A stretch of DNA of 64,000 nt from positions 62,001 to 126,000 of the forward strand of contig CDMY01000277.1 of the NCBI GenBank assembly GCA_001179505.1, given 5' to 3'. How positions within the stretch are numbered: position 1 is the stretch's first letter; every line of letters starts with the position of its first letter. The stretch comes from Vitrella brassicaformis CCMP3155 (Eukaryota > Protista > Chromerida). A program made the position numbers and the translations under genes. Below the pieces are notes generated by a model that worked only from the letters and a program-made list of their open reading frames with translations, ran no database searches and was not told where the DNA came from. This document shows positions 40,072-62,662 of this stretch, in pieces.

Positions 40072-43000
40072 ATGGCTGACACAGAGGTGAGAATCGTCAC
40101 ATGCGCAAGGTCATTGTGATCTCATCGTGATCTGTCTGTTTGTCTGTCTGCCTGTCTGCCATTGATGCAGGCTGGCGAGTTTTTGATAGAGGTGGGCAAG
40201 GAGCTCAATCGGACGCCAGAACAGATGCAGGGCATCATACAAAAGTGAGCAAGCGACGAACGAGCGGCAGTCAAAGAAAGATCCACAGCCGGTCGCGTGT
40301 TGGTTGCTGCGTGTGTTTGTGTCGTGTGCAGGGTGGTTGTCGACAACTGGTACGAGACCATTGGTAAGCCAATCACCGAACCATTCACACACACATATAT
40401 GGCTGCCATCTATTGACCACCAACCACACACGTGTCGGGTGTGACTGTGACTGTTCACTCAGAGTCTCTGCAGGAGGTGAGCGACGTGCAGTGGCAGACG
40501 ATGCAGCTCCCCGGCCGCCTCATCGACATCATCAAAGCCAAGCTAGCGCTACTCGCACCCCAACACCAGCACCTTTCCATCCCGCCCGTCCACCACCCAG
40601 TGGCACCCTCACCATCAGCCATGATGGACGTCGACCCCTCCTCCTCTGTGCCTCAGCCCGGCGCCATGGCCAGTGCCAACGCGCTGAGTCCGCCTGCCGG
40701 TTTGGGTCTGCCGCTGTCGATGCCGTCAATCCCGTCAGTGGCGGCCACGTGTGGGGACAGCGTGAGCTCGGTCAAGGAGTTCAACAGCAACGAGGACCGG
40801 GAGATGGAGGGCAGCGATGTCGAGAGGCTCACCACTGGTCAGTCACTCACACAGAGAGGGACAGAGAGAGGAGTAAACCAGGAGAAGAGAGGGGCGATGG
40901 TTCGTCAGCCGGCCGGCACGCACAGTTGTGTTGGGCTGTTTTGATGTTCTGTTTTCGCGTTTTCTGGTGTTGTGTGTGTTAGTTGAGTTTGCGCCACCGG
41001 AGGAGGTCAAGTTCCCCCTGCCCATCCTCTCCGCCACCGAGAAAATCAAACAGGAGGTAAGAGGGGCAGTCAGGATGGATAGAGTGACTCCGAGAGTCGT
41101 CACATGGCCAGCCGGGTGGGTGTCCACTATCAGGTTCCCGTCGACAAGATGCCAGGCGTGTTGATCACGCTCGGCCGGCTGCTCAACGGAGTGCTCGCGA
41201 GCCCCACAAACGAGAGCAAACGCAAAATACGAAAGGTGCGTACGCGTGGGGCGAAATGAAGTGGCAATGCACTCATTCACAGCATAGCCTGTCTGAGTGT
41301 TGGGTGTGTGTGTTGGTGGCCTCACCACCCACTCAGGAGAATGAGAATTTCCAAGCCAAAGTGGGCCAGTTCGCTGCAGGGGTGGCCTTCCTTCAATCGG
41401 TAGGAGCGTCTGTCTGTCGTGGATGTGCGCCATCTGTGTGCAATTGATTTGTGTCACCAACCAGGTCGGTTTCCAGGACGTCGGCGAGCACCTGATCCTG
41501 CCTGTGGCGTACCTCTCACGGTCAGCCAGGCAGTCACGCCATGCGCCATAGCCACATTGGCAGGTGTGCCGTGTTTGGTATGGTTGCTGCAGGCTGACTG
41601 ATGCGCACGGTGCGTTGACCGAGCTGGGCCGCGAGGCGGGCGTGACGGTTCCGCCCATACCCAACCCCACACCGGCTGACAAACACATCATGTAAGTGCG
41701 TGAGTGCGCTGCCCACACCCACACACGCGCCATAGACAACACACATACGAACACACACACACGTGCGTCAGGTTCAACCCCTATCAGTCGAGCATCACCT
41801 CTACCACGGCTGAGTTCAGGCAAGAGGGAGGCGGGGCGGGATGGATGGATGGATGTGTGGGTGTGTCGTGCCTTTGTGTTGCTGGGTGCCGTGCAGTCGG
41901 GTGCAGGGCAAGCTGGCCGAGAAGCGGTTTCACGAGGTCGACCAGATACGCGCTGAGCTCAAGCAAAAGAAAGAGGACATACGCGTAACTGAGCCACCCG
42001 AAGCCCACGCCACACTAGCTAGTGGCCCATGTGTGTGTGTGTGTGTGTGTGTGTGTGCCTCTGTGCCTCCGTCAGCGTGGCGGCGAAGGCGACACAGTGG
42101 AGCTGAGGCCTGTGGCCTTCCACCTCTCGCGTACACAAACAAGATCGCCACACCACCGACACCCACACTGTTCATCTTTCTCTGTGTGTGTTGGTGTGGT
42201 GTGTGCAGGTATGGGTCGTTTGGAGGATGCATTGAGTGCGGTGCAGCAGGAGCGTGAGCAGGAGGAAACCAACCCAGGGGAGGCCGGCGTGGCCCAGTCG
42301 GATATCGCCAAAATCAAGGAGGTCTGCGAGCGCTTCACAGGCTGCGCTTTGACATCACTGTGTGTGTGTGTCTCTGTGTGTGTGAGTTGTTAGAGTATGG
42401 GTGACGGTCCGCAGTTCAAGTCGCGTGCCAAGCAGGAGCTGGCCAAACTGAGCAAGCAGAAAGTCCACAGACAGGCAAGTGCATGTTGAGCGACTGACTG
42501 AGTGACCCTCTGCTCACCTGATTGATGCACACGTGTGTGTCGTGTGCGTGTGTGTGGCTGATGCAGTGCATACTGCGTGTGTTGTTCCCCGACAAGCTGG
42601 TGCTGCAGCTGCACTTCCGCCCCGTCGACACCATCGCACACGTGCAGCAGCAGATCAAGCAGGTACACACACACATTGCAACTGGGTGGATGGACGGATG
42701 GATGGATGGATGGACGCTCCCACGATTGTGTCTGTGTTCAGCTGTTACGTGAGGAGTGCAGGGATCTGCCGTGGTACATCTACGAGACCCCACCGATGCG
42801 CAAATTCACAGCTAGAAGGACGCTCCACGACGAGGTGCGCATAGCTGTCCGGCAGAAAGGGAGACACCCAGCGCAGGGGATCATTTGTCTTGGGTATCTC
42901 TGTCTGCAGGGTCTGGTCCCCGGTGCTATGGTGCACTTCGCCTTTGTTGGTGGGGAGGGAGGGAGGGAGGCGAGGAGTCGAATGGGTGTGTCGATTGATC

Positions 43001-43233
43001 CCTATCTCACGCATGGCATGTATCAGGTGCCGCCAACGGCTCTGCGGCCAACATCCCCCAGCCTCCTTACCTGCAAGCATCGCTCCTCACACACCTGACC
43101 ACCCAGACACAGCAGACACAGCAGCAGGTATGGGTGGATGTGCGCAAGCACTCACTGACTGACAAGGCAGGCAGGCAATGCTTCTGTTGACCATTCAGGC
43201 CACCAATGCGCCGAGCACATCGCCGTCGGAGTC

Positions 43234-43264
<31 letters not shown>

Positions 43265-43318
43265 AGTGGTGCTGCAGAGGCCGACCGGCCTGTGCTCAAC
43301 GGCACGGACAAGGACTAG
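40072..43318 (+). CDS. PUB plus UBX domain protein (UBXN6/UBXD1/PUX2-like p97 cofactor), multi-exon
   Basis: PUB: LITLGRLLNGVLASPTNESKRKIRK|ENENFQAKVGQFAAGVAFLQS|VGF. Linker FNPYQSSITST. UBX: LRVLFPDKLVLQLHFRPVDTIAHVQQQIKQ...WYIYETPP...TLHDE|GLVPGAMVHF. Confidence 0.85.
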
Positions 43319-44041: not shown

Positions 44042-44744
44042 ATGATGGTCCGTGTGCTCGGCCTGGTTGTACTCGTCGCTCTCGCTGGCGTCGCCTCGTG
44101 CGACTTTGTGCGGAAGCTTGGGGAAAAGCCTGGTACGCTGCGCTTACACGTCATCATATGTCTGCTTGCTGTGATGTTCATGCACTCGTGCGTGCAGCTG
44201 ATGAGCCTGCGCCGGCCCAGTGCACGAAGCCCGCCTTCAGCACCCCATTCGCGGACTTCAAAAAACTCAACATCAATGACATCTTCGTGGCAGGGCCAAA
44301 CAGCGTCGTCAACGCCACCCTCCCCGCGAGCAAGATGAAGAAAAAAGAAAAGGTAACACACACGCAGGCGCGCAGGAGCCCACGCACACTCCGCACACTC
44401 ATGTGTGGATGCACTCATGCACATGATGCACGCGGGTGATGTCCCTTTGCGTATGTGCAGGGTGGTGATAAGCCGATGAAGCGTTGCGCTGCTCATTCGC
44501 GTGGTGATGAGCTGGCGACCCAGGAAGCGTACTTACTGGAAGAAGTCTGCACGGATTGGTAAGCATCTTGTCTCGACATGGAATGGCAGGCATCAAGCGC
44601 AGCGCGTGTGATGGTATGGTGTGTGCTTTTGCTTCCTCTTCGATCAGCTGGTGCTATTCTGTCGGCGTGATCGAAATTTGTGGCTATGCTTGCCTAGAGC
44701 TTTGGGACGACGGCGAGGTTTTCATAGCTGTGTACGACTGCTAG
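44042..44744 (+). CDS. Small secreted Cys-containing protein (~150 aa, 4 exons)
   Basis: Signal peptide MMVRVLGLVVLVALAGVASC, then ADEPAPAQCTKPAFSTPF...|GGDKPMKRCAAHSRGDE...EEVCTD|CWCYSVGVIEICGYACLELWDDGEVFIAVYDC*. Splice phases 1, 0, 2 are all consistent. Confidence 0.75.
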
Positions 44745-48295: not shown

Positions 48296-48541
48296 TCAGT
48301 GCTTACATTTGCCGTGTTCGTCGTCGTCATCTTTCTTGCAGTAGCAATGGTGGTTGTACTTACATTTCCGCCCCTCGCTCGTGGCGTCACTCTCATGATG
48401 CTCAGTGGTGTAGTATGTCAGCCCACGCAGGCCACCCTCAGCGTCAGCCTCTTGAGCGTCATCCGCAGACGTCAGGCCGTTGGCTTCCTGCGCGGCAGCC
48501 AAGGCAAGCATGCCCAGAGCGAGGAGCCACAAGGTCTTCAT
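48296..48541 (-). CDS. Small secreted His/Cys/Asp-rich protein; may be spliced into the adjacent gap
   Basis: MKTLWLLALGMLALAAAQEA (signal peptide)...GLRGLTYYTTEHHESDATSEGRKCKYNHHCYCKKDDDDEHGKCKH*. It ends 12 nt before the gap. Confidence 0.65.
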   Translation of the reverse strand: MKTLWLLALGMLALAAAQEANGLTSADDAQEADAEGGLRGLTYYTTEHHESDATSEGRKCKYNHHCYCKKDDDDEHGKCKH

Positions 48542-49965: not shown

Positions 49966-50509
49966 CCACCCCCCCGGGTGTGTCATCCGGACGTCATGCA
50001 GCAGACAAATACCATTCACGAACGATGCGGAAAGCCGTTCACACGTCCGGCCAAAAACAAATGCCGTGTGTGAGTGGATGAATGGATGGCTCAATCAGCC
50101 AGACAAAGAAAGAAAGTATGCAACAGCCATGCATGCGAAGCGAACTACCTCTCTCCCGTCTCTCTTCGTCCCGTCTGCATCCCAGTCAGCTATGCAACCG
50201 GCAAACCAGCCAGCCACCAGTCTGCCAACCAACCACTACCCTTGATGCACATATCCCACTCACCATGCAACCAACGCATTTGTGTGTGGACGCCATACAT
50301 GCTCCGCATGTCCGTCGGGAAAGCCCTTGCCCACCCGACCATGCAGTTCTAAGCGCACACCACCACACAGCACACGAACATTCGCCCATGGATCACTCAC
50401 TCCCGCGTGCACAAACAAGCTCATGAATTGTGAATTGATGCACCCAACCCGCACTCAACTCAACTCAGCATAAGACAAGCATGCACCTCTACGTGCACCT
50501 GTCGGCTAC

Positions 50510-51786
50510 TCAGCGGAGGGAGCGCTGGGCTTTGAGGTCCGCGATCTCCGTCGCCTGCATGCGGACGGTCTTGGCCAGCGCTTCGATGGCTTCGGCCTGG
50601 TTGTCGCTGCGCGTCTGTAGCTGCTGGGCCACTATAATTGTCTGCCACGTACACACAAGCGAACACACAACACACAGCAAAGGAGGGACGCGGATACACA
50701 CATACATGTGAAGCCTCGATTGACACGTGTGTGCTATTCACCTTGTAGAGGAGAGCGTATTGGTTCACATGGATGCTCTCTTCGGGCTCCGGGGTGCCCA
50801 CGAGGTGTGCTCGATTAGTCATCACCGCGTCAGGGAAGATCGCCTGTGTGGATGGGATGGCCAAAACACAGACATATCAACGGACAGAGCCGAGTGAAGA
50901 GTAACGGTGGTCTCGGGCTGCCCCATCGCACCCACCTTAAGCTCCTCGCCAATCACGCCAGTGATTGGGGTCTCCGCCTCCGCCTCCGCCTGAAGCCCAC
51001 GTCCGGCCACCTTACGCTGTCAGTGTGACAGCACACAAAGGGAGACACCATTCCACCCACCCACCCCCTCCATCGCTGCCTTGGCTTGCTCGCCATGCAT
51101 GCCGTCGGTACCTCCGTACCTTGTATGTGTGCATCTTGATGAACCTGAACCGCTCATAGGTGTTGCTCAGCTCCTGCTCGGGCATAATGTCCACTTGGGA
51201 CAGACTGCTGCGGCCGACCCTGCTGTTCCCGTCGAGGATCTCCTCGGCCGCGACGCTGGCCAGCATGCTATTCTGTCCGCAGCCCATCGCCCCTGCGCCG
51301 ACACACACGACACAGAAGACGTGCAAGGCAAAAAGACATTAGAGCTCGTGGTGTCAGCTCATATCCGCCTGCATCCACTACGGCGTGCAGAGACCTACCG
51401 GATCCATTCTGAACCTCTCCGTTGTCCTCATTTGCAGCCACCAACACTGGTTCAGGTCTGTTTCTTCCCGTACTACTACTAAGGTCACACTGCAAGCGAA
51501 ACATACACACAGACAGACACAAATCAGACAGACACGTGGTCCAAATGGCCATCCGCATCCCAGCTACCGCGTGACTCAACATTTCCTGAACAAGACACCG
51601 CAAACCACGTCCTGGGTTGGTTGGGCGTATTCTTTGTTTGGCCGCCTGCCTGACCCTTACCGTCGGCGTAGAGTCCATCAGGAGCTGTTGATCAATTTGA
51701 TTCATTGGATTGCAGGCCATCCACATCTTCGCTGATGCTGGCATTGCTGCTGCCAGGGCAGCGAACACGACGAGCAGACGAGTCAT
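50510..51786 (-). CDS. Secreted protein with C-terminal ICA/peptidase S74-like (MYRF/phage tailspike chaperone) domain and coiled coil, paralogue A, 7 exons, intact frame
   Basis: MTRLLVVFAALAAAMPASA (signal)-KMWMACNPMNQIDQQLLMDSTPT|EMLSHA|CDLSSS...LVAANEDNGEVQNGS|GAMGCGQNS...VGRSSLSQVDIMPEQELSNTYERFRFIKMHTYK|RKVAGRGLQAEAEAETPITGVIGEELK|AIFPDAVMTNRAHLVGTPEPEESIHVNQYALLYK|TIIVAQQLQTRSDNQAEAIEALAKTVRMQATEIADLKAQRSLR*. All splice phases are consistent. Confidence 0.8.
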
Positions 51787-52015
51787 GATGCACACACAGC
51801 ACACAGACCTGCGGTTCGGCGGAGAGTGACAGGGGTGAAGTGGCTCTGGATCACGGGATGCTCTGGTTACGGAATCTCGTGAGTACCTGGCGTTAACGAT
51901 TCAGCCGTAACGAAATCACACTGCGCGATCCAAGCTCGGGAACTTTGCCGTACCGTAAATCCGGCATCGCGTACGCCATCGCCGCGCCTTTCGATCTGTG
52001 TGCTGTGTGCGTATC
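51787..52015. promoter_or_regulatory. Putative bidirectional promoter between the two ICA-like paralogues
   Basis: 229 bp between divergent ATGs; both ATGs are preceded by tctgtgtgctgtgtg..atc; the spacer has GTTACGG (51866), CGTTAACG (51891) and CCGTAACG (51905). Confidence 0.55.
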
Positions 52016-53351
52016 ATGGGTCGCTTGCTCAGCCTCTTCCTTGTTGCCCTGGCAGCAGTGGCAGCAACGCCAGCATCAGCGTATCCACCGCCGGCGGCCG
52101 GCGGGGGGAGGATGTGGATGGCCTGCAGGCCACCCGATGGAATCGATGAACCGCTCCTAAGGGACGACAAGCCGACGGTAAGGGCAGGCAGGCGCCAAAC
52201 AACCAATACGCCCATCCTGACATATTGACGTGGCTTGCGGTGTCTTGTTCAGGAAATTGCGCTTGACGCGGTAGCTGGGATGAGGATGGGCATTTGACCA
52301 CGTGTCTGTCTGATTGTCTGTGTGTCTGTGTGTATGTTTCGCTTACAGTGCCAGATTGCCAGACAGGGCTTGTGGCGGCAGATGAGACCAACGGAAGGGC
52401 TACGCGTTAATACGGTAGGTCTTTGCATGCCGCAGGCGGATATGAGCTCGACACCACGAGCTCTAATGTCTTTGTGTCTTTGTGTCTTTGTGTCTTTGTG
52501 TCTTTGTGTCTGGGTGTCGGTGTGTCGGTGTGTCGGTGTGTCGGTGTGTCGGTGTGTCTGTCTGTCTGTGCAGGGTCGGTTGGCTGCGAAACGGGCATGG
52601 TGGTGGAAAGAGTCTTCACCGACAGAGTCTTCGACCGGGACGGCATGGTCACCCGCAGCAGTCTGTCCCAAGTGGACATCATGCCCGAGCAGGAGCTGAG
52701 CAACACCTATGAGCGATTCAGGTTCATCAAGATGCACACATACAAGGTACGGAGGTACCGACGGCATGCATGGCGAGCAGGCCAAGGCAGCGATGGAGGG
52801 GGTGGGTGGGATGGAATGATCTCCCTCGGTGTGTGCTGTCACACTGACAGCGTAAGGTGGCCGGACGTGGGCTTCAGGGGGGGGCGGAGACCCCAATCAC
52901 GGGCGGCATTGGCGAGGAGCTTAAGGTGGGTGCGATGGGGCAGCCCGAGACCACCGGTACTCTTCACTCGGCTCTGTCCGTTGATGTGTCTGTGTTTTGG
53001 CCATCCCATCCACACAGGCGATCTTCCCTGACGCGGTGATGACTAATCGAGCACACCTCGTGGGCACCCCAGAGCCCGAGGAGAGCATCCATGTGAACCA
53101 ATACGCTCTCCTCTACAAGGTGAATAGCACACACGTGTCAATCGAGGCTTCACATGTATGTGTGTAACCGTATCCCTCCTTTGCTGTGTGTTGTGTGTTC
53201 GCTTGTGTGTACGTGGCAGACAATCATAGTGGCCCAGCAGCTGCAGACGCGCAGCGACAACCAGGCCGAGGCCATCGAAGCGCTGACCGAGACCGTCCGC
53301 ACGCAGACAACGGAGATCGCCGCCCTGAAGGGTCAGCGCTCCCTCCGCTAA
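52016..53351 (+). CDS. Secreted ICA/peptidase S74-like protein, paralogue B (inverted duplicate), 7 exons; frame problem in exon 3, possible pseudogene or altered splicing
   Basis: MGRLLSLFLVALAAVAATPASA...MWMACRPPDGIDEPLLRDDKPT|EIALDA|exon 3 (52349-52414)|GSVGCETGMVVERVFTDRVFDRDGMVTRSSLSQVDIMPEQEL...TYK|RKVAGRGLQGGAETPITGGIGEELK|AIFPDAV...LLYK|TIIVAQQLQ...LKGQRSLR*. Exon 3 is 66 nt versus 91 nt in paralogue A. Confidence 0.7.
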
Positions 53352-54915
53352 TTCGTCGGTGGATGCCTCCATCCATGGTTGTCTGGTCGAGTAGCTCGAG
53401 GGGGGATTCAAAGATGTTGGTTGGTTGATGGGTGGTATTGCCTCAGCGTCGCGTGAGCGTGTAGCATGTGTAGGATGACTTGTCGCGTCATGGGTGGGTT
53501 GGGGATGCGGTCAATGTGAACATTGAGGGCGTCATTGAGCAGACAGGACGTACATTCACTTCAGGAGGTGTCCATCCGTCCATCCATGAAATGAATGAAA
53601 TGAAATCAGTGCACACCACACCATCATCACGATGCATACGGCCGGTCGGCCTCGGTCGTCCGTGACTTGTACGCCATATATAACAAGGCACAAAAAACAT
53701 GCACACACCAGCAAGAGGCAGTCGCTCAGTCACACAGGCAGGCAGGTAGGTAGGAAGAGGAGAAGAACCACGTGGCTCATACAGCATCAGCAGCACAGCA
53801 ACATTGCAGTGAGTGACAAAGATGCAGCAGGCAGGCAGGCAGGGAAGCCATCAGTCAGCCAGTCAGCCGATCAGTCAGTCAGTCAGTCAGTCGGTCGGTC
53901 ACATGCTCAGGCAGGCAAGAACGTTAAGAAAAGGCATCCGATTGACGCCACCACACTACTTGCTTACTGCGTGTGTAGGTGTGAAGGAAGCCCAACGAAT
54001 TACCTCCCATGACAGTCAATGTACCAACATCCCATCACCCACCCTCCAAGGGGCACGTGTGCGATAGCACAGCGAAAAACCCTCGCTCCCCTTTGTGTTG
54101 CATAAGACACGCACATGGATGGATGGCATGTGCAGGCATCATGCTGACTGACATGTAATTATAGGTAGGTTGATGAAGGGATGGATGGATGGATGGATAA
54201 ACAGACAGGTGTATTGTATGGTGCATGGTACGGTGGACAGGGGCAAAATTACAGATCCTTCCCTTCGCGACCGCCTTGGTGTACACGTGAAGGGAACGAT
54301 CATGGTATGGTATGGTATGCATTGCATATACATGATACTCATGTACGTATGTATTATGTATGGGACAGACAGCACAATACATAATGGCACCCATGTATGT
54401 ATTAAGGCTCTCTCTTACGTATGTATGGATGTAGGGTAGGGGGGTTATGTACACGTACATGTACAAGTACACACACACAACCGCAAAAAGTGCCTCGGTG
54501 CCTGCGGGCGGGCAGGAGTGTCCTCTCTTGTCGGTCGACAGACAGAAAGACAGATAGACCCCACGCTACAGGTGACGGCCGACAACAACCGCATGGAACA
54601 TGCAATTGATCGGTACCTACAGACGGCCGGCACGAGTAGTGTGACAGAAAAAGTGACACGGAAAGACAGACAGGCAGGCACCGGGGATGGCTCGATTGTC
54701 GATCAATGGACATGAACACAGTGATGAACGATGAGACCGATAAAGCACCACGCAATACTTACACACACACACACACACACGTACACACAAACATGCAAGC
54801 GATACGCTACACCACAGGCGTGCAACACAGAGATCCATCACACGAACACACTCACTCGTATACACACAGCAAGACATGGACACATGCAGCCACGCATTGC
54901 ATGCGAAGAGGCGGG

Positions 54916-57900
54916 CTAGAGCCCCTTTCGGCTCGCCCGGTCCTTCTTGTCGCGGAATACCCTGTACATATCCCGCCACCCACTGCCGGCATTGATCAGG
55001 CGGTCCACCACGAAGGCCATGCTGGACTGGAAGTCCGTCAAGGGCACCTCCTGGCTGTCGTCGAAACCCGCGGTGTCGTCCTCGCCGCTGCTCAAGATGT
55101 CGATCGACGACGTTGAGCTGTGATGGAAAGAACCGCCCCTCCGCACTGGAGATGATGTGCCTCCCTGACAAAAACGCATATCAGAGATGCGATGACGAGA
55201 TGTCTCTCCGTCTCAATGGTGGCGTGTGAGCGTACCTTGAGCTCTAATGACGGCAGCAGGACCGTCCGTGCGACGCCAGTGGTAGGGTCGTGTATTGACC
55301 TCTTCCGCGCCTTGTAGACCTCGAAGGTGGACCGCCACAGGAACTCGACCACGTCGGTGGGGATGTTCTGCATGCCCAGCTGCTCGATGATCTCCTGCAT
55401 CGCCTCACTCGTCAGCGTCATGATCTCAGAACAGCACATCTTCCGCTGGTCGCTCTCTAACCGCGCTGTCAGAGAGAGGGACAGCGTCGCCGTCACGCGC
55501 CTCCAGAACGTCCGCGCACGTTGCCCTGACGTCGCGTCGGATGACGGGCTGGCGCCCTCGGTTGCCCTCGACTGGCTCGCCTGGCTGGCCTGAGCACCTC
55601 GTGACTGGCTCGATGGGCCGCTCTCAGGTGTGCTGGCTCTTCCGGAGTCGGCTGGGTCAGTCCCTTTGTCGTCGGCTTGCGGGTCTTCTGGCCACCCTTG
55701 GTCGCCCCGCGAGGCCTTGCGTGGTGTAGGGGATTGAACGGGCATGTGTGTAGGGCCGTGAATTGTCGCTGCACGGCGAGATGAGGATGCCGTCGACTGG
55801 TCGGCGGATGGGACAGTCGTCCAGCATTGCCGCAACATGGCCGTATGCTCTCGTTGGGGGACCTTCTGAGCGGTGACGGGCGAGCAAGGCACCGACTCGT
55901 CATCGTCCCTCTCTGAGCGCGTCTCTTGCACCGCCTGTGTGCTGTCTGTGCTCGCCCGCGGGCGGTAGATCCGTGGCGGGGCGCTGCTGATGGTGGCGGG
56001 CAGGGGCAGTGATGCCGCACGCAGCGCCCAAGAGTCGGTTGTAAGTGTCCGCATCCGGCCGTTGGACGGGGGGCCAGACGGTTCCTTGGTTCTCATAATC
56101 AGGGTGAGCTCTCCGCGCTCCGTGCTGAGACGCACCAGTGGCAGCTTGGCTCTCCTCCTGTCGGTCGACGCTGCGATGCCGAAGGCCATCTTGCGAAGGG
56201 GGCCCAGGGCACTGTCGGTGTTGCTCTTCATCAGCAGAATGGACGTCATGAGGACCTCGAGGGAGTGGTGAATGGTGTGGAAGATGAGGGTGATGATGTG
56301 GAACGAGTTCATAATGACGATAAGCGCCGTCACGGCATAGCCCAGCCCTTTCTGGAAGCCGGGGTCGTCCTCAACCAGCGGGTGACCCGATGTGCTCGAC
56401 AGCAGCATCAGACACCACAGAGAGATGTTCCAAATCAGCAACCCTGAACGAATCGATGAATGAACAAACAGACAGATGAGACAGATGCACGCACCCCACT
56501 GCCATTCGTACCTTGCGCCTCCATGCGATTGAGCAGGTCGAACGTTCTCGAGTCGAAAGGCTTGATTTTGAGCTGCAGGAAGAGTGACAGGCCCGCGATC
56601 AGCTGCCAACACACCAGCTGGATCATCCCATTACCCAGAGACGCACCAACCTGCAGACACACAAACGGAGATACGGACCGAGACATACAGGAAGTGACCG
56701 ACAACCCCCCCACGTCTCTCTGCTGGCCACATCCCCCGCACCCACCTGAGCTATGACCAGAGTTGCAATGCGTCTCAGGGCGAAAACAGCATCATAGAAG
56801 TAGTAGGACCGACGGTAGCCGTTGTACAAGAAGCCGAACATCCGCCTCGTTTGCCGTTTGTAGAGCCGCCCCGACTGCTTGTACGAGCACAGAATGCTCA
56901 GTGCCGCGATGACCGGGCCGAAGGACCACACGCACAGCCCCACGACGGCGACGATGGTGTAAACGAGATGTTCGCGCTTGTAGCACTCGATTGAGGTGTC
57001 GAGCAGTGAGAGGCGGACGGTTGGATAAGGCTTCTCGAGGAGTTTGCCGGGGGGCTCCCACCAGGGGATGGTGGGGAAGGTGCGGCAAGGGAGGATCTCC
57101 AGCAGCTGACGCGTCACGGCTGAGGACGACAGGTATGGACACAACAATACCACGCGACATCTTCGTCTCGTCTGCTGTCTGTGTGCCCGTCTTACTTGGA
57201 TGGATGAATGTGAGGCACACAATCCAGAGCTGAGGGCACAGGAAGTGCCGCCACCATTCTGGTTCGCCCCGCACTTCGCTCTCGAGGCTGTTGGTCGAGC
57301 TCGACCGCCTCGACAGCCCACACCGCCAACTGTGGAATCCCTCTGGTTCTGCCCGTGTGTCCCTCGCTGATGGGTCATCTCTCCGCATGGGACTGCGCGC
57401 CTCGTCCTGTGGTGTCGTCGGTCCACCACGCCAGGGCTTGGAGAAGAGCGATGGCAGGACTTTCCAGAGGCCCCAGCAGAGTGTCGCCACAGCCAGCCAG
57501 AGGAGCGGGAAGGCGATCCATGCGGCCCTCTTGATCAACATGGCCTGCGCCCCAGTCATGTTAAGATCTTCCTTCAGTAGACACTCCCACCTGCGGGTCA
57601 GGCAGACAGCACATTGATGGGACACAAACGTTCTGCTCATCGGCTGTGTCGGCTCACGTGAAGTCTGCTGTCACCACACCACCTGAATGAGATACACAAC
57701 AAAGCGAGAGAACAGCAGATTGCGAAAGCTGCATATGCATCGTGTAGATGTGTGGTGCCTTTTCATACCGTCCCAGCTGAAATACTCTCGCAGGACCTGA
57801 ACGGCTTCGGAGGGCAGCATGTGGCCGCCTTGGACACCGAAGCGCGCCAGCGCGCTCACGACGGTGAAATGATTCAGTGCGATCTTGATCAGCATGCTGA

Positions 57901-60900
57901 TCCGGACAGATGGAGAGACATACACACACGGGCATGTGACATACTTGAATGATGTGCCTTGGCCAGTCTATATGACGCACCTGTGGACCGACGCGCGAGG
58001 CAAAGTGGACGACCTGAGAGAGAAAGAGATCAGCACGACACCCACAAGTGCACCCGGATGCCAATTGAGCTGTGGTCAAGAGAGCGGACCTTTGCGAGAG
58101 CACGGTTGCCGCGAATATGACGGCGAGGATAAGCACGTAGAGGAAGATGGAGAGCAGCACGTTCAAGGCCTTGTTGTTGCATTTCCGGCACAGCCCTAAC
58201 GACGTTCCCACACTCCGCCACCCCCTTTTGCACGACCCACAGAGATGCCCCTCATGTCCCTCCTGCACACACACACACGAGGCGACACGATGCGTGCAGA
58301 GCCGTCATGTGTGTCCCTCTCCCTCCCTATCTCACCTTGCACTTGTTCAGCTTTTCGACCATCGTGTTGTTGTGCCGCACGGACCCCTCACATGCTTCAG
58401 GGATCGGACATTCCACCAATACGGGGCTTGACGTCACGTATGCGTCATACCTGAACAAACGAATCACAAGAGCAACCCCAGAGTGGCCGAAGAGTGGGCC
58501 GACATGTGCACATGCCTACGTCGAGATTGTCAGCAGCAGCTCTAGTGAGCGATTCGGGGCTGTGGGCTCGCCGGCTGTCTCGTAGATGGCGGACAGGTTT
58601 ATCCCCCGCACCATGGCCAGGTGCCCGAGCTCGAGCGGCTGATTGCCGCCCTCCAGCACCGCACGCACTGTGGCAGACGGACCCACTGCCCCGATGCACT
58701 TGACGTCCTTGATCGGCAGAAGAGGCACCGTAAGGTTGACCTTAGTCTCCAGCTCGAAGTACCCCTCGTTCACCATGAAGGCGGCGTGGTAGCCATGAGT
58801 GGAGTCGTCGGCATAGTCAGGCCCACATGGAGCATCTTCTTCTCTGACCCCTTTTGGCAATGGATGGCACTGATTATCTGCACGTTTCCTGGACAATGAG
58901 ACATGCACAAGGGATGTGAGGGTCAACGTGTTTGTTGCTGTTTTTGTCTTACAGGTAGAATCCCTTGTCGCAGAAGCAGTCCTCCCCCTTCGTAGTAGCC
59001 CTTAGGCTGGTGAAGTGTTTGGGGCACTTCTTGCAGCTGGCGTCGTTGCCTTCGGTGTCCTTGTACGTGCCGGCCGGGCATTCGCGACATTTCTTGTCCT
59101 TGAGATCGTAAACCCAGCCCGTGGCACATTCGCATGCCGTCCCGTTATTCGTAGCAACTGTAACCAACACAGGACAACAACGAAACCAGAAAGCATCTCG
59201 ATGACCGCGTCCGTTCATTCATCGGTATCCCCCTCACTCACTCACCAGATCCCTCAGGACACTCCTGGCAATCAACCCAGCCCTTTTCCCGAATCGTGAC
59301 TTGGCCTTGGGGGCATTCGGTGCAGTCGAGGCCCTTGCCCTCATAGCCGTCCTGGCAGCGGCACAGCACTTCCTCCTTCACCGTCACGTCGAGGTCGATC
59401 TGCTGCAGGTAAGGGCATATTTTGGTGCACTCGACGCCTGTTATGTTGTTCTCCTCATAGGGGCGATAGCCGTTAATGTCGGCCGTGAGATGAGCCTCGC
59501 CGTCCCAGCCCGCCTCCAAGAACAGCTGTTCGTGCTCCTCACAAGTCTTGTTGTCATGCTCCTGGATCTGAGCATTCACACACACACACACGTGTACACA
59601 TACACGCCGGTTTTAAGCAGTGCCTGTACTCTGTCTGCAGCGCACCTCTTCCATCCGAAGATCGGGGTTGAGGGTAAAGTTGGCGCGATACATCTTGATC
59701 CAGTTGTGGCGTGCGTCCCATCGTCGCTGCATTGGTTGAACGGTCATGTCGATCGAAGTCAGACTGTTATTGGCCAGGTTCAGGAACACCAAGGACGTGG
59801 GTATCACATCCCTATGCAAAAACAACCAGCCAGGAATAGCGAGATGTATCAACGCCGCATCTCGCCACAGCTCTCTTTGTGTCGTGCTTTGCTTACACTC
59901 CCTCCCTGATCTCCTGTATGGAATTGTTCTTGAGGTTTAGAAGCTGCAGCTGTTCGAAGCCCTTCTTGACGCCCAGGCTGGTGTTGAGAGTGAGGTTTTT
60001 CATGACGTCATCCAGAGTGACTACGTCGTTAAGGGTCTCCACATCCACCACATGTTCGTCAGGGTCGAAGTCATCCACCACAGGCTCATCACTCGGGTTT
60101 GGATCCACCATGCTCATATTCGTGGCGTTCTCCGTCAGCCCATAGGCAGCCATGAACGATTTCTTGAACCGCCGGAATGGTGGCGTGTCGAGTAGCCCTG
60201 TCCGCAGAACCTCGTCCATATCAATCGCGTTCACCCCGTCAGGCGTGAGGGCGCCGTGCAGACCGTTGCTCTCGCCAAAGATGGCATGGATGTAGTCGTT
60301 GTATTTCCAAGGCATCAGGAACTCATCAGCCGTGACGTTGATCTGGTTGCCGCGAAGCGAAAGATACCGGATGGTTGGCCAGTAGGGCGGGGGGTTCTGC
60401 ACAGACACGTACACAGCGGACGTCTCATGGCAGTTTGCGCGCGGTGTGAATGCACCTACCTTGAGGATCTGGGCAACAATGCGGGCTGACGGACTTGGGC
60501 CTGAACAGACAGACAGACAGACGGACAGACGGACAGACATGTTGACGGGTCGCTCCGGCTCGCTCCTGCTCTCTGGCAGCGTCCTGCCTTGACTCGTCTC
60601 CCTCACTGGTGAGTCGAGTGTGAAGTCCAGGGTCGTGTATTCCCCATCCCGAGCCGATACTCTTGATGTGATTGCAACTCAAGAACAGCCGCCGCACTGC
60701 AAACACATTCACATACATGAAAACCACACCGACTCCCCATCCCTCCCCCCTTCCCACCCTCCCTCGTGCCCGCGTGTGTAGTACCTGTCTTAATCCGCCG
60801 CCAATTGGGCGGGATCCGCGGCAGCTTGTTGTTGGATGCGTCCAGATGCACAAGCCTGAAATGATGCACAAAACAAGCCGATTTCAGCCAGCCATCGGTG

Positions 60901-62662
60901 TCGCCTTCCTTCCTTCAGACACTTACGCAGGTGGAATCTCCCATGTCCCGCCTTCCCAGCCCGTAAAGTTGTTCCGCCCCAGCCGCAGCGTGTGCAGACC
61001 GTCCAGCTTGCTGATCCACGCGGGGATGAGTCCTGTGAAGTTGTTGCTCTCCAGCTCGAGCGTGGTCAGGTTCTGCAGGGCCTCGAGAGTGGCAGGCAGC
61101 TCGGATAGATTGGTCCTGCGAAAGATGAGTTCCCTCAGCGACTTCAGATTGTTGAACGAGTCGGGGATCGGGCCAGTTATATTCTGACGAAGACAGCAAC
61201 GCACGATCAAAAAGGAATGAACGCACCAGGGGCGCCCGAGTGAATCGATTGTTGCTGTCTGCCTGACCGGTGAGCCGACGATCTCAAACTCTTCCAGTTT
61301 CGTGTTGGTGCCGTAGAATGGAGGGATGGGCCCCCTGATGTCTCTGCACTCTTGAAGTCGGAAGACAGTGAGGTTCTTCTGCAGCTTGAGAGCAGGGAGC
61401 GGGCCCTCAACGCCAGAGTTCCTGATATCCACTTCCTCAAGCTCCTGGCAGTGATCGAAGGACCCAGTCAGGCGGCCCGTGATGTTCTCGCCTGCCAGCC
61501 TCAAGACGCGCAACGTTCTGCAGGGAGCGGGCCCAGTAGGGCCGTGGTTGAAGAGCGACTGCATGGTGAAATCGAGGTTGGTCTTTATCAGGCTGAGGGA
61601 CTCCAGTGACGTGGTGAAGAGCTCGTGAAAGGAGGGCGGCAGGGTGCCATTGATCGGGGTCTCGTCAATGTAGATGCCGCGGAGGAGCTTCAGCGACGTT
61701 ATGTTGTTGGGAAGGGGGCCACTGATATGGGGACACCGGTCGATATAGAGCACGCGAAGACCGCCCGTACAATTCCGTTCCCCACTTGATGGTTCTGAGC
61801 AACTGGCCTCGAGATTGCCGATCTTCTCGGAGAGTGTGCCTTCGATTGGCGCATTCATCAGGACGACGCCCAGGAGGCCTTTCAGCTCGTATAAGGAATC
61901 GTTCAATGGTGAGCCACCAGGGGGGAACTTCAGCTGCGTCTGGTACACGGGGTCGATGATCACAAAGTATCCCTCCACAAGATCAGGCAAGTCCGTCAGG
62001 AGATGCTCGGGTCCCCGCTCACCTCGCCGATCTACTCGTATGCAGACCATGAAGGGGAGCTCACAGACGGGGAATTGAGCGGGCACGTCGCTAGCCTTGA
62101 TGTTCATGCTCTTGATGAAGTTCCTCAGAGGTTCTTTGGCGTCCTCGTCGCACACGTCGCAGCCCTCGCGGACCAGCTGTATCTTCTCGGGAGGAGCCAT
62201 CCGGTCGCTCATCGCGTGGTACCTCCACAGCAGCTGGATCTTGGATCGGATGATAGACTGCATTGGCCTCGGCGAGCCAGAGGGGGTGCCGTCGAACCAG
62301 TCCGTGTAATTGTACGTCTTATTGGCCCCTCCACCAGCATCTGGGGGTCGAGATGTGGGCCAGCTGTCATCGGGCACCTGCAGACGCCGGTGTGGCGGCA
62401 CGTAGAAAGGGTCCGGTCCTTCCCGAGCTTCAGAGAGGGATCGATAGTAGGGATCGTCATCCAACGTGTCGTCACCATCGCCACCATCACGATAGGGAAA
62501 GGAAGGGTCGCGGGAGGACGCAGCTGGTCGCTCCGGGGAGCGTCCAAGGGCAAAACCAAGACTTCGAGCCCCATCGGTGGCGCTGGATCTGGCCGAGAGG
62601 GTCGACAGAAGAAGAACGGAGAGCAGTGAGGCGCCAGAAAAAGAAGGACGGGTCATTGTCAT
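54916..62662 (-). CDS. Large receptor-like membrane protein: signal peptide, plant-type LRR array, EGF/TNFR-like and GCC2/GCC3 Cys-rich repeats, multipass (~7 TM) domain, long Ser/Thr-rich cytosolic tail
   Basis: MTRPSFSGASLLSVLLLSTLSA; LRRs such as NITGPIPDSFNNLKSLRELIFRRTNLSELPATLEALQNLTTLELESNNFTGLIP; CRCQDGYEGKGLDCTECP; CRECPAGTYKDTEGNDASCKKCPKHFTSLRATTKGEDCFCDKGFY; CEGHEGHLCGSCKRGW...CRKC; TM region IKIALNHFTVVSAL...LDTSIECY...FGFLYNGYRRSYYFYDAVFALRRI. Confidence 0.82.

What the first reader, a model, noticed from the sequence alone, without database searches (positions are those of the whole stretch)
50510..53351. Inverted pair of secreted proteins ending in a MYRF/phage-tailspike intramolecular chaperone (ICA, peptidase S74)-like domain
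Seen: two head-to-head 7-exon genes, each with a signal peptide, a short (~90 aa) Cys-containing N-terminal region, and a C-terminal RSSLSQVDIMPEQELSNTYERFRFIKMHTYKRK...TG(V/G)IGEELKAIFPDAV...IHVNQYALLYKTIIVAQQLQTRSDNQAEAIEAL...EIA(D/A)LK. Known: ICA domains (Pfam PF13884, plus the MYRF_ICA coiled coil PF13887) have the pattern SDxRxK...Y(R/K)YK...GVIAQE(V/L)K.I.PEAV...L.VN....L.....A.QEL...TDNL...I..L. They trimerise phage tail fibres/endosialidases and MYRF, then cleave themselves off. The spliced sequence aligns to that pattern, as recalled from memory, with almost no gaps. The match only appears after splicing 4 small exons, so automated ORF annotation would miss it. Inference: a family of small secreted trimeric proteins (spike-, adhesin- or wall-like) built by a phage-derived chaperone, with no DNA-binding or TM domain, unlike MYRF/MrfA. 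I am not aware of such a system being described in chromerids or apicomplexans.
Basis: partly seen in the sequence, partly recalled or inferred. Interest (0 to 1): 0.85.

Follow-up and report, generated by a model that had tools for sequence, protein, structure and literature searches.

The report
Secreted dead phage-cap proteins, Vitrella
Two back-to-back genes of the coral-associated alga Vitrella brassicaformis (one intact, one broken) encode small, probably secreted proteins whose conserved tail is a distant relative of the three-chain "chaperone" cap of phage tail fibres and animal MYRF that has lost its self-cutting residues. Their short head changes unusually fast, and databases already label the domain although nobody has studied it.

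Summary
The inverted pair is real: two head-to-head, about 1.3-kb, 7-exon genes of Vitrella brassicaformis CCMP3155, 86% identical, with start codons 229 bp apart.

- **Gene A** (minus strand) is intact. It is CEL99308.1, which UniProt already names "Peptidase S74 domain-containing protein".
- **Gene B** (plus strand) is broken. Against its intact paralogue it has a 16-nt deletion in exon 3 and a CAA>TAA change. The public annotation splits it into two fragments.
- **ICA homology holds.** The best solved-structure match is MYRF ICA (E 6e-4). A phage tail-fibre family matches at E 4e-8. hhalign against genuine phage ICA domains gives 91%. 39 of 40 ESM-Atlas neighbours carry PF13884. All four solved ICA folds top the fold search. 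Pfam itself stays below its cut-off.
- **The Ser-Lys cutting pair is absent** in every alignment, so canonical self-cleavage is not expected.
- **The head evolves fast.** Between intact paralogues the 86-residue head shows 17 amino-acid changes and no silent ones. The ICA-plus-coil tail shows dN/dS of about 0.2.
- **Best reading:** a permanent trimerising scaffold that displays a fast-evolving secreted head. Trimerisation, secretion and function are untested.

The scan met the same reading before on other DNA of this genome: the paralogous pair, s1-212003.

The parts
51661..51786 (-). Gene A exon 1: ATG at 51786; signal-peptide-like residues 1-19 (..PASA|K) and the start of the variable head, including Cys25
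   Evidence: Splice model. The upstream ATG is used in the complete transcript ORFs of the paralogue (P0002/P0049). The public model CEL99308.1 starts 22 codons later.
51568..51585 (-). Gene A 18-nt micro-exon (EMLSHA)
   Evidence: AG/GT flanks. The homologous micro-exon is present in paralogue transcripts and models. It is absent from the public model of gene A, so its inclusion here is inferred.
51399..51489 (-). Gene A exon 3 (91 nt), variable head, Cys49, N-G-S sequon
   Evidence: joint at 51292|51399 in RNA-type contigs.
51120..51292 (-). Gene A exon 4: end of the variable head (Cys83), then the start of the ICA-like domain at RSSLSQVD (from 51212)
   Evidence: the hhalign alignment starts here.
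50936..51016 (-). Gene A exon 5: ICA core, ..TGVIGEELK (equivalent of the GVIAQE motif)
   Evidence: joint 51016|51120.
50742..50843 (-). Gene A exon 6: ICA core, AIFPDAV..VNQYALLYK
50510..50641 (-). Gene A exon 7: C-terminal helix or coil and stop codon
   Evidence: A contig with 0 differences over 50400-50643 is spliced to 50742. The model shows a helix with pLDDT 83-96. There is a 7-residue (one heptad) indel against the paralogues.
51787..52015 (.). 229-bp divergent intergenic region between the two start codons (shared promoter region, inferred)
   Evidence: The repeat arms extend only about 35 nt upstream of each ATG.
52016..52177 (+). Gene B exon 1: signal-peptide-like start and the start of the head
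52253..52270 (+). Gene B micro-exon (EIALDA)
52349..52414 (+). Gene B exon 3, broken: 16-nt deletion against the intact paralogue B2, and TAA at 52408-52410 in the ancestral frame
52574..52746 (+). Gene B exon 4: read out of frame after the deletion, stop at 52697-52699. The ancestral frame still holds RSSLSQVD...
   Evidence: public 123-aa model ends here.
52851..52925 (+). Gene B exon 5 (ICA core remnant)
53018..53119 (+). Gene B exon 6 (ICA core remnant)
53220..53351 (+). Gene B exon 7 and stop. Still transcribed.
   Evidence: Contigs with 0 differences over 53238-53450. The public 107-aa model CEL99310.1 covers 52732-53351.

Best explanation
Gene A is an expressed nuclear gene for a roughly 240-residue protein with three parts. 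The parts are a cleavable signal peptide, an 86-residue cysteine-containing head, and a conserved tail of about 135 residues. The tail is a very divergent, catalytically dead homologue of the intramolecular-chaperone (ICA, peptidase S74) domain of phage and virus fibres and of MYRF, and it ends in a helical coil. The family also includes two intact paralogues on another contig. Because the Ser-Lys pair that cuts the domain off is missing, the domain most likely stays attached. It would then act as a permanent trimerisation scaffold that holds three copies of the fast-evolving head together outside the cell or in the secretory pathway. That would make a small trimeric recognition or binding molecule whose specificity is under diversifying selection. 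Gene B is a decaying copy that is still transcribed at its 3' end. Shown here: the gene structure, the homology, the loss of the dyad, the lesions in B, and the selection pattern. Inferred: secretion, trimer formation, lack of cleavage, and a binding role.
For: Homology to ICA was tested seven ways. (1) phmmer against all PDB sequences: the only hit below E 0.1 is MYRF ICA 7dc3 (E 6e-4, 124 residues aligned). (2) PHROG 1980, a tail fibre protein family, matches through its C-terminal end at E 2e-5 to 4e-8 in three paralogues. (3) PF13884 is the top or second hit in all three, at 12-16 bits. (4) hhalign of the Vitrella family against 17 Pfam-verified ICA proteins gives probability 90.8%, E 1.2e-6, over 110 columns. 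(5) 39 of 40 nearest ESM-Atlas clusters are PF13884 (score 0.92, 176 shared features). (6) All 9 tblastn hits in phages lie at the extreme C-terminus of tail-fibre genes. (7) In the fold search, the top 11 PDB hits are ICA entries, and the four solved ICA entries rank 1-4 at Z 6.2, 6.1, 5.5 and 4.4. Dyad loss: S, D and K are invariant in the 17 ICA proteins but absent from the Vitrella proteins in four different alignments. There is no lysine within 17 residues of the site. Selection: for A against A2, the head has 17 nonsynonymous and 0 synonymous differences, and the tail has 11 and 13 (Fisher p 1.5e-4). Against the intron rate, the Poisson p is 0.001. Tail dN/dS is 0.18-0.26 among intact copies. 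Head exons are less alike than the introns around them. Expression and splicing. Host gene, not a virus: six introns, host-like G+C, and host neighbours (LRR protein, PUB protein, ankyrin protein) at both loci. Coil: a long, confident terminal helix and an indel of exactly seven residues between paralogues.
Against: Pfam PF13884 stays below its gathering score (22 bits), and PF13887 gives no hit. The usable structure model has mean pLDDT 65 and was built on an alignment seeded with ICA proteins, so the fold match is partly circular. With the family's own 3 sequences, the model was useless (pLDDT 42). No trimer prediction, secretion prediction or proteomic data could be obtained. All known ICA domains are cleaved off, so a permanent ICA would be unusual. 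The selection statistics rest on few sites and on paralogues that exchange sequence by gene conversion. Exact-match RNA contigs cover only the 3' end of the window's own genes. The N-terminal exons are seen only as the paralogues' versions.
Confidence: 0.55

Rival explanations
1. The domain still works as a true intramolecular chaperone and is removed, either by a non-canonical catalytic arrangement or by another protease. The mature secreted product would then be only the roughly 65-85-residue hypervariable, cysteine-containing head. This resembles a pro-peptide system with a conserved signal, a conserved pro-domain and a hypervariable mature peptide.
For: Every characterised ICA domain is released after folding (PMC3742443, PMC8326128, titles and abstracts). 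Serines cluster at the aligned site (R-S-S-L-S-Q). The pattern of a conserved signal, a variable mature part and a conserved remainder is what secreted-peptide precursors show.
Against: The general-base lysine has no counterpart, and the nucleophile serine does not align in any of four alignments. No dibasic site lies at the head/ICA border.
Confidence: 0.2
2. The genes are decaying remnants of an integrated virus fibre gene (polinton-like virus, giant virus or phage) with no present function for the alga.
For: PF13884 fibre genes are widespread in polinton-like viruses of protists (PMC12220804). Fold neighbours include Mimivirus and chlorovirus proteins. Gene B is already dead.
Against: Six spliceosomal introns with transcript-confirmed joints. 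Host-like composition. No viral genes beside either pair. Purifying selection on the tail (dN/dS about 0.2). A signal peptide that is identical between paralogues. No relative in IMG/VR by the pattern scan.
Confidence: 0.05
3. The N-terminal hydrophobic segment does not lead to secretion. Instead it is the first half of a bipartite plastid leader, or it retains the protein in the endomembrane system.
For: Chromerids have complex plastids reached through the ER (established knowledge). No localisation tool was available here.
Against: After the predicted P-A-S-A cut there is no long hydroxylated, basic transit-peptide-like stretch. The conserved M-W-M-A-C motif follows at once in A and A2.
Confidence: 0.12
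4. The resemblance to ICA is chance, and the tail is an unrelated helix-rich domain.
For: Pfam is below threshold. An exhaustive phmmer search of 1.84 billion representatives finds nothing outside Vitrella. Structural Z values are only about 6.
Against: Seven partly independent tests all point to the same family and to the same C-terminal position.
Confidence: 0.05

Closest known systems
ICA domain of MYRF (PDB 7dc3; Li et al. 2013, PMC3742443; PMC8326128)
   Same: Best sequence match among solved structures (E 6e-4, 124 residues) and best fold match (Foldseek E 3.7e-4; Z 6.2). The order of elements is the same: helix, beta-hairpins, the G-V-I-x-x-E..P-(D/E)-A-V motif, then a terminal helix. 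Both are eukaryotic nuclear genes.
   Different: MYRF has an Ndt80-type DNA-binding domain, a beta-helical stalk, a transmembrane segment and the S587/K592 cutting pair. The Vitrella proteins have none of these and instead carry a signal peptide. The PF13887 coil family is not matched.
C-terminal intramolecular chaperone (peptidase S74, PF13884) of phage tail fibres and spikes: K1F endosialidase 3gw6, GA-1 neck appendage 3gud, T5 L-shaped fibre 4uw8
   Same: The domain sits at the extreme C-terminus and has the same core motifs and fold. PHROG 1980 tail fibre matches at E 4e-8. hhalign gives 91%.
   Different: Phage passengers are long trimeric beta-helix or fibre proteins of hundreds to thousands of residues, and the domain cuts itself off at an invariant S-D-x-x-L-K. 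Here the passenger has 86 residues, the motif is gone, and the gene has introns and a signal peptide.
PF13884-capped fibre proteins of polinton-like viruses and giant viruses of protists (PMC12220804)
   Same: This is an ICA domain in the eukaryotic virosphere and a plausible source of the algal genes. Mimivirus and chlorovirus proteins are among the fold neighbours.
   Different: Those are large modular virion proteins inside viral elements. No viral context, no detectable close viral relative, and a dead dyad are found here.
The paralogous head-to-head pair of the same genome (CEM20042.1/CEM20043.1 on CDMY01000520.1; scan note s1-212003)
   Same: Same architecture and orientation, 90-93% DNA identity to B and A respectively, and the same loss of the dyad. 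Both are intact and are the source of the abundant transcripts.
   Different: Both copies are intact there. Their terminal coil is one heptad shorter, and 17 amino-acid differences lie in the head of A2 against A.

Membership tests
ICA / peptidase S74 domain (Pfam PF13884, PROSITE-based UniProt label) | Sequence match to the family profile at the curated threshold | tested here: not met
   PF13884 scores 12.3-15.8 bits in three paralogues against a cut-off of 22, and matches profile positions 11-57 only. UniRef nevertheless names three of the four paralogues 'Peptidase S74 domain-containing protein'. The rule behind that name could not be run here.
ICA / peptidase S74 domain | Homology of the core shown by more sensitive methods | tested here: met
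   PDB phmmer against MYRF ICA gives E 6e-4. PHROG 1980 gives E 4e-8 to 2e-5. hhalign against 17 verified ICA proteins gives 90.8%, E 1.2e-6. 39 of 40 ESM-Atlas neighbours carry PF13884.
ICA / peptidase S74 domain | Catalytic Ser-Lys pair in the S-D-x-x-L-K motif at the N-terminal edge of the domain | tested here: not met
   S, D and K are invariant in 17 reference ICA proteins. The Vitrella proteins have ..S-Q-V-D-I-M-P-E-Q-E.. with no lysine. Neither residue aligns.
ICA / peptidase S74 domain | Fold: helix, beta-hairpins and a long C-terminal helix that forms a three-helix coil | tested here: inconclusive
   The model (pLDDT 65) has this order of elements. All solved ICA entries top Foldseek and VIA (Z 4.4-6.2). 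However, the input alignment was seeded with ICA proteins, and the Z values are middling.
ICA / peptidase S74 domain | Sits at the C-terminus of a trimeric fibre or beta-helix passenger whose folding it assists | tested here: inconclusive
   The C-terminal position is met. The passenger has only 86 residues, no repeats and no recognisable fold.
ICA / peptidase S74 domain | Homotrimerisation and autoproteolytic release | not testable with these tools
   No multimer prediction is available here. This needs biochemistry.
MYRF / MrfA membrane-bound transcription factors | Ndt80-type DNA-binding domain, transmembrane segment and MYRF_ICA coil (PF13887) | tested here: not met
   Pfam scans of the whole proteins and of each exon show none of these. 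The protein has about 240 residues.

The most novel reading that the evidence does not exclude
A virus- or phage-derived fibre cap has been domesticated by a chromerid alga and stripped of its protease function. It has been turned into a permanent trimerising stalk for a family of secreted recognition molecules. Their heads are in an arms race with bacteria, viruses or the coral host, which would make this a new kind of eukaryotic extracellular receptor or decoy scaffold.
Probability: 0.25. Interest if true: 0.7.

Novelty: new variant of a known kind. Interest (0 to 1): 0.45.

Why it matters
Outside viruses, the ICA domain is known in eukaryotic cells essentially from one protein family, MYRF, where it acts as a self-cutting trimerisation switch. 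Here the same module appears in a different setting: small signal-peptide proteins of an alga closely related to apicomplexan parasites. The cutting residues are lost, the domain itself is kept under purifying selection, and the attached head changes faster than the neighbouring introns.

If the domain really serves as a permanent trimer scaffold, that would show a second, non-proteolytic use of this viral module in cells. It would also mark a candidate family of fast-evolving surface or secreted recognition proteins in chromerids.

The practical points are modest but concrete:
- The public gene models omit the signal peptide.
- They split the broken copy into two 'genes'.
- They label a probably dead domain as a peptidase.

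Tried and rejected
- **Exon-by-exon Pfam scan:** Pfam scans of the single exons by reference gave nothing useful. The domain only shows on whole proteins.
- **Exhaustive phmmer:** the search of 1.84 billion representatives found only the protein itself and a 52-residue fragment. No relative outside Vitrella is reachable by single-sequence search.
- **Pattern scans:** scans of IMG/VR and of the JGI metagenomes found no relative.
- **AlphaFold2 with the family's own three sequences:** failed, with pLDDT 42.
- **In-frame rescue of gene B:** I considered an alternative acceptor at 52363 and a weak donor at 52405. I rejected it as unsupported. The RNA-type contigs use the conserved donor at 52414. 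The ancestral frame carries a TAA as well. The public annotation also treats the gene as split.
- **Different-strain hypothesis:** I first thought the 90-95%-alike RNA contigs and the MMETSP proteins came from another strain. Searches showed they come from a second pair in the same assembly.
- **Exact look-up of P0001:** nothing found.
- **Head alone in the ESM Atlas:** only sub-threshold leads, to phage-fibre-like clusters.
- **Findings search by sequence:** blank.
Full report
**What is there**

The window is nuclear DNA of Vitrella brassicaformis CCMP3155 (contig CDMY01000277.1). Positions 50510-51786 (minus strand, gene A) and 52016-53351 (plus strand, gene B) are inverted copies of one small gene. 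The start codons are 229 bp apart. DNA identity is 86-88%, introns included, and the similarity ends right after the stop codons.

- **Splicing of gene A.** Conserved GT..AG sites give an open frame of 240 codons in seven exons: 51786-51661, 51585-51568, 51489-51399, 51292-51120, 51016-50936, 50843-50742 and 50641-50510.
- **Micro-exon.** The second exon is an 18-nt micro-exon. It is present in transcripts and public models of the paralogues. The public model of gene A (P0003 = CEL99308.1) leaves it out, so its use in gene A is inferred.
- **Start codon.** That public model also starts at an internal Met and so drops residues 1-22. The complete transcript ORFs of the paralogue use the upstream ATG.
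- **Signal peptide.** That stretch reads as a classical signal peptide: a basic residue, a hydrophobic run, then P-A-S-A. This is seen in the sequence only, because no predictor was available.

**Gene B is broken**

With the same conserved sites, gene B does not stay in frame. I fetched the intact paralogue B2 and aligned it at DNA level. Two lesions appear in exon 3 (52349-52414):
- a 16-nt deletion;
- TAA at 52408-52410 where B2 has CAA.

Read from its ATG, gene B ends at 52697-52699. The public annotation has a 123-residue product there and a separate 107-residue product (CEL99310.1) that starts at an internal Met. I considered an alternative-splice rescue and found no support for it.

**Transcripts**

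Four public runs that behave as transcriptomes hold contigs with joints at every predicted C-terminal intron of both genes, with GT..AG or CT..AC ends. Most of these contigs are only 90-95% like the window.

They belong to a second head-to-head pair of the same assembly: CEM20042.1/CEM20043.1 on CDMY01000520.1, fetched as locus L005. That pair is 93% (A2) and 90% (B2) identical to A and B.

Contigs with no difference cover only 50400-50643 and 53238-53450. The first is gene A's last exon plus 3' UTR, spliced to exon 6. The second is gene B's last exon plus 3' UTR. So the window's genes are transcribed at least at their 3' ends. The heads seen in the RNA are those of the other pair. Contigs cannot show absence.

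**Is the tail an ICA domain?**

The single exons give no Pfam hit. For the whole proteins:
- **Pfam:** PF13884 is the top or second hit at 12-16 bits, below the cut-off of 22. PF13887 does not appear.
- **Solved structures:** phmmer against all PDB sequences finds MYRF ICA (7dc3) as the only hit below E 0.1, at E 6e-4 over 124 residues. A profile of the three paralogues keeps it on top at E 0.011.
- **PHROGs:** family 1980 (tail fibre protein) matches through its C-terminal end at E 2e-5 to 4e-8.
- **ESM Atlas:** 39 of the 40 nearest clusters are PF13884.
- **Phage genomes:** tblastn gives nine weak hits (E 2-7). Eight cover over 80% of the query, and the three that were fetched all lie at the extreme C-terminus of tail-fibre genes, in stretches that Pfam confirms as PF13884 at E 1e-11 to 1e-16.
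- **Profile against profile:** I collected 17 such reference proteins. hhalign against the Vitrella family gives probability 90.8% and E 1.2e-6 over 110 columns.
- **Structure:** a model built on the family alone failed (pLDDT 42). A model built on an alignment that includes ICA proteins reached pLDDT 65, with helix, hairpins and a long confident terminal helix. Its top 11 Foldseek hits in the PDB are ICA entries. VIA-align ranks the four solved ICA entries first, at Z 6.2, 6.1, 5.5 and 4.4. BFVD returns ICA-capped fibres, including Mimivirus and chlorovirus proteins. The fold result is partly circular because of the seeded alignment.

Taken together, I put homology of the tail to the ICA domain at about 0.9.

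**The cutting residues are gone**

In the 17 reference proteins, the S, D and K of S-D-x-x-L-K are invariant. In all four Vitrella paralogues the corresponding place reads ..R-S-S-L-S-Q-V-D-I-M-P-E-Q-E... There is no lysine until 17 residues further on.

Four alignments place the motif slightly differently, and none pairs the serine or the lysine with a like residue. By the mechanism established for endosialidase and MYRF (papers listed), self-cleavage should not occur. This is inference from sequence, not a test. For that reason I file the domain as a catalytically dead homologue, not as a peptidase S74.

**Selection pattern**

The head exons are less alike than the introns beside them. Exon 3 is 62% identical and the first part of exon 4 is 60%, against 81-94% for introns 1-3.

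| Comparison | Region | Nonsynonymous | Synonymous | Statistic |
|---|---|---|---|---|
| A vs A2 (both intact) | head, 84 codons | 17 | 0 | Fisher p 1.5e-4 against the tail |
| A vs A2 | tail | 11 | 13 | dN/dS 0.23 |

Against the divergence of introns 1-3 (9 differences in 251 nt), 7.1 amino-acid changes were expected in the head. The Poisson p is 0.001. A-type against B-type heads give dN/dS of 1.4-1.9.

The signal peptide is identical between A and A2. Three cysteines (25, 49 and 83 in gene A) and short motifs (M-W-M-A-C, L-V-A-A, G-C-G) are kept. The numbers are small, and gene conversion between copies is evident, so this is suggestive rather than proven.

**How it probably works**

- **Best reading (confidence 0.55):** after signal-peptide removal, the dead ICA-like domain and its terminal coil assemble three chains and stay attached. 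The difference of exactly one heptad in the coil between paralogues fits a coiled coil. The domain would then present three copies of a small disulfide-capable head whose surface is under diversifying selection. That would make a secreted trimeric binding molecule.
- **Main rival (0.2):** the conserved tail is a pro-domain that is removed by some other means, and only the head is released.
- **Other rivals:** viral debris (0.05), non-secretory targeting (0.12) and chance similarity (0.05) are argued against in their own entries.
- **Origin:** unresolved. No close relative exists in 1.84 billion representatives, IMG/VR or the JGI metagenomes. PF13884-capped fibres are common in polinton-like viruses of protists (PMC12220804), which makes a viral source plausible. 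Neither locus has viral neighbours.

**Novelty and earlier notes**

No paper in the searched library links S74/ICA with chromerids. UniRef already carries the automatic name. This scan reached the same reading (lost lysine, fast head, permanent scaffold) on the paralogous pair in note s1-212003. I reached the dyad loss and the intron/exon contrast before reading it. I then tested its claims here on both pairs.

Other notes report further secreted ICA proteins in this genome, some with an intact dyad. I could not check those.

My verdict is a new variant of a known kind. It is real and moderately interesting, and its function is untested.

Noticed in passing
window 51721-51786 and locus L005 (upstream of 6001 and of 5566): The public gene models of gene A and of both paralogues (P0003, P0045, P0048) start at the internal M-A-C.. 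methionine and so omit the signal peptide. The complete transcript ORFs (P0001, P0002, P0047, P0049) start at the upstream ATG.
   Followed up: partly
window 52440-52572 (intron 3 of gene B): Expanded simple repeats (GTGTCTTT and GTGTGTCG units) make this intron about 53 nt longer than in gene A (159 against 106 nt). The reads tool skipped repeats at 52467-52524.
   Followed up: no
proteins P0047, P0049 against window 53220-53351: Two MMETSP transcript ORFs join heads of the second pair (B2, A2) to a last exon identical to that of the window's gene B. This is either chimeric assembly across the identical exons 5-6 or real sequence exchange between copies.
   Followed up: no
window 50510-50641 against L005: The terminal helix of A and B is exactly seven residues (one heptad) longer than in some products of the second pair (P0001, P0002, P0048). 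The public model P0045 has a still shorter, different end.
   Followed up: partly
window about 54916-61720 (-) and about 40510-43318 (+), from L004 coordinates: The neighbours are ordinary host genes. One is a gene for a product of 2082 or more residues with LRR and ephrin-receptor-like hits, which runs over the end of the fetched locus. The other is a PUB-domain protein. Two short unannotated-function models lie at about 48296-48541 and about 44042-44744.
   Followed up: no
protein P0004 (JGI/IMG, 3455-nt contig): A 52-residue fragment from a JGI/IMG record matches gene B's C-terminus with one difference. This hints at Vitrella-like sequence in an environmental or other data set.
   Followed up: no
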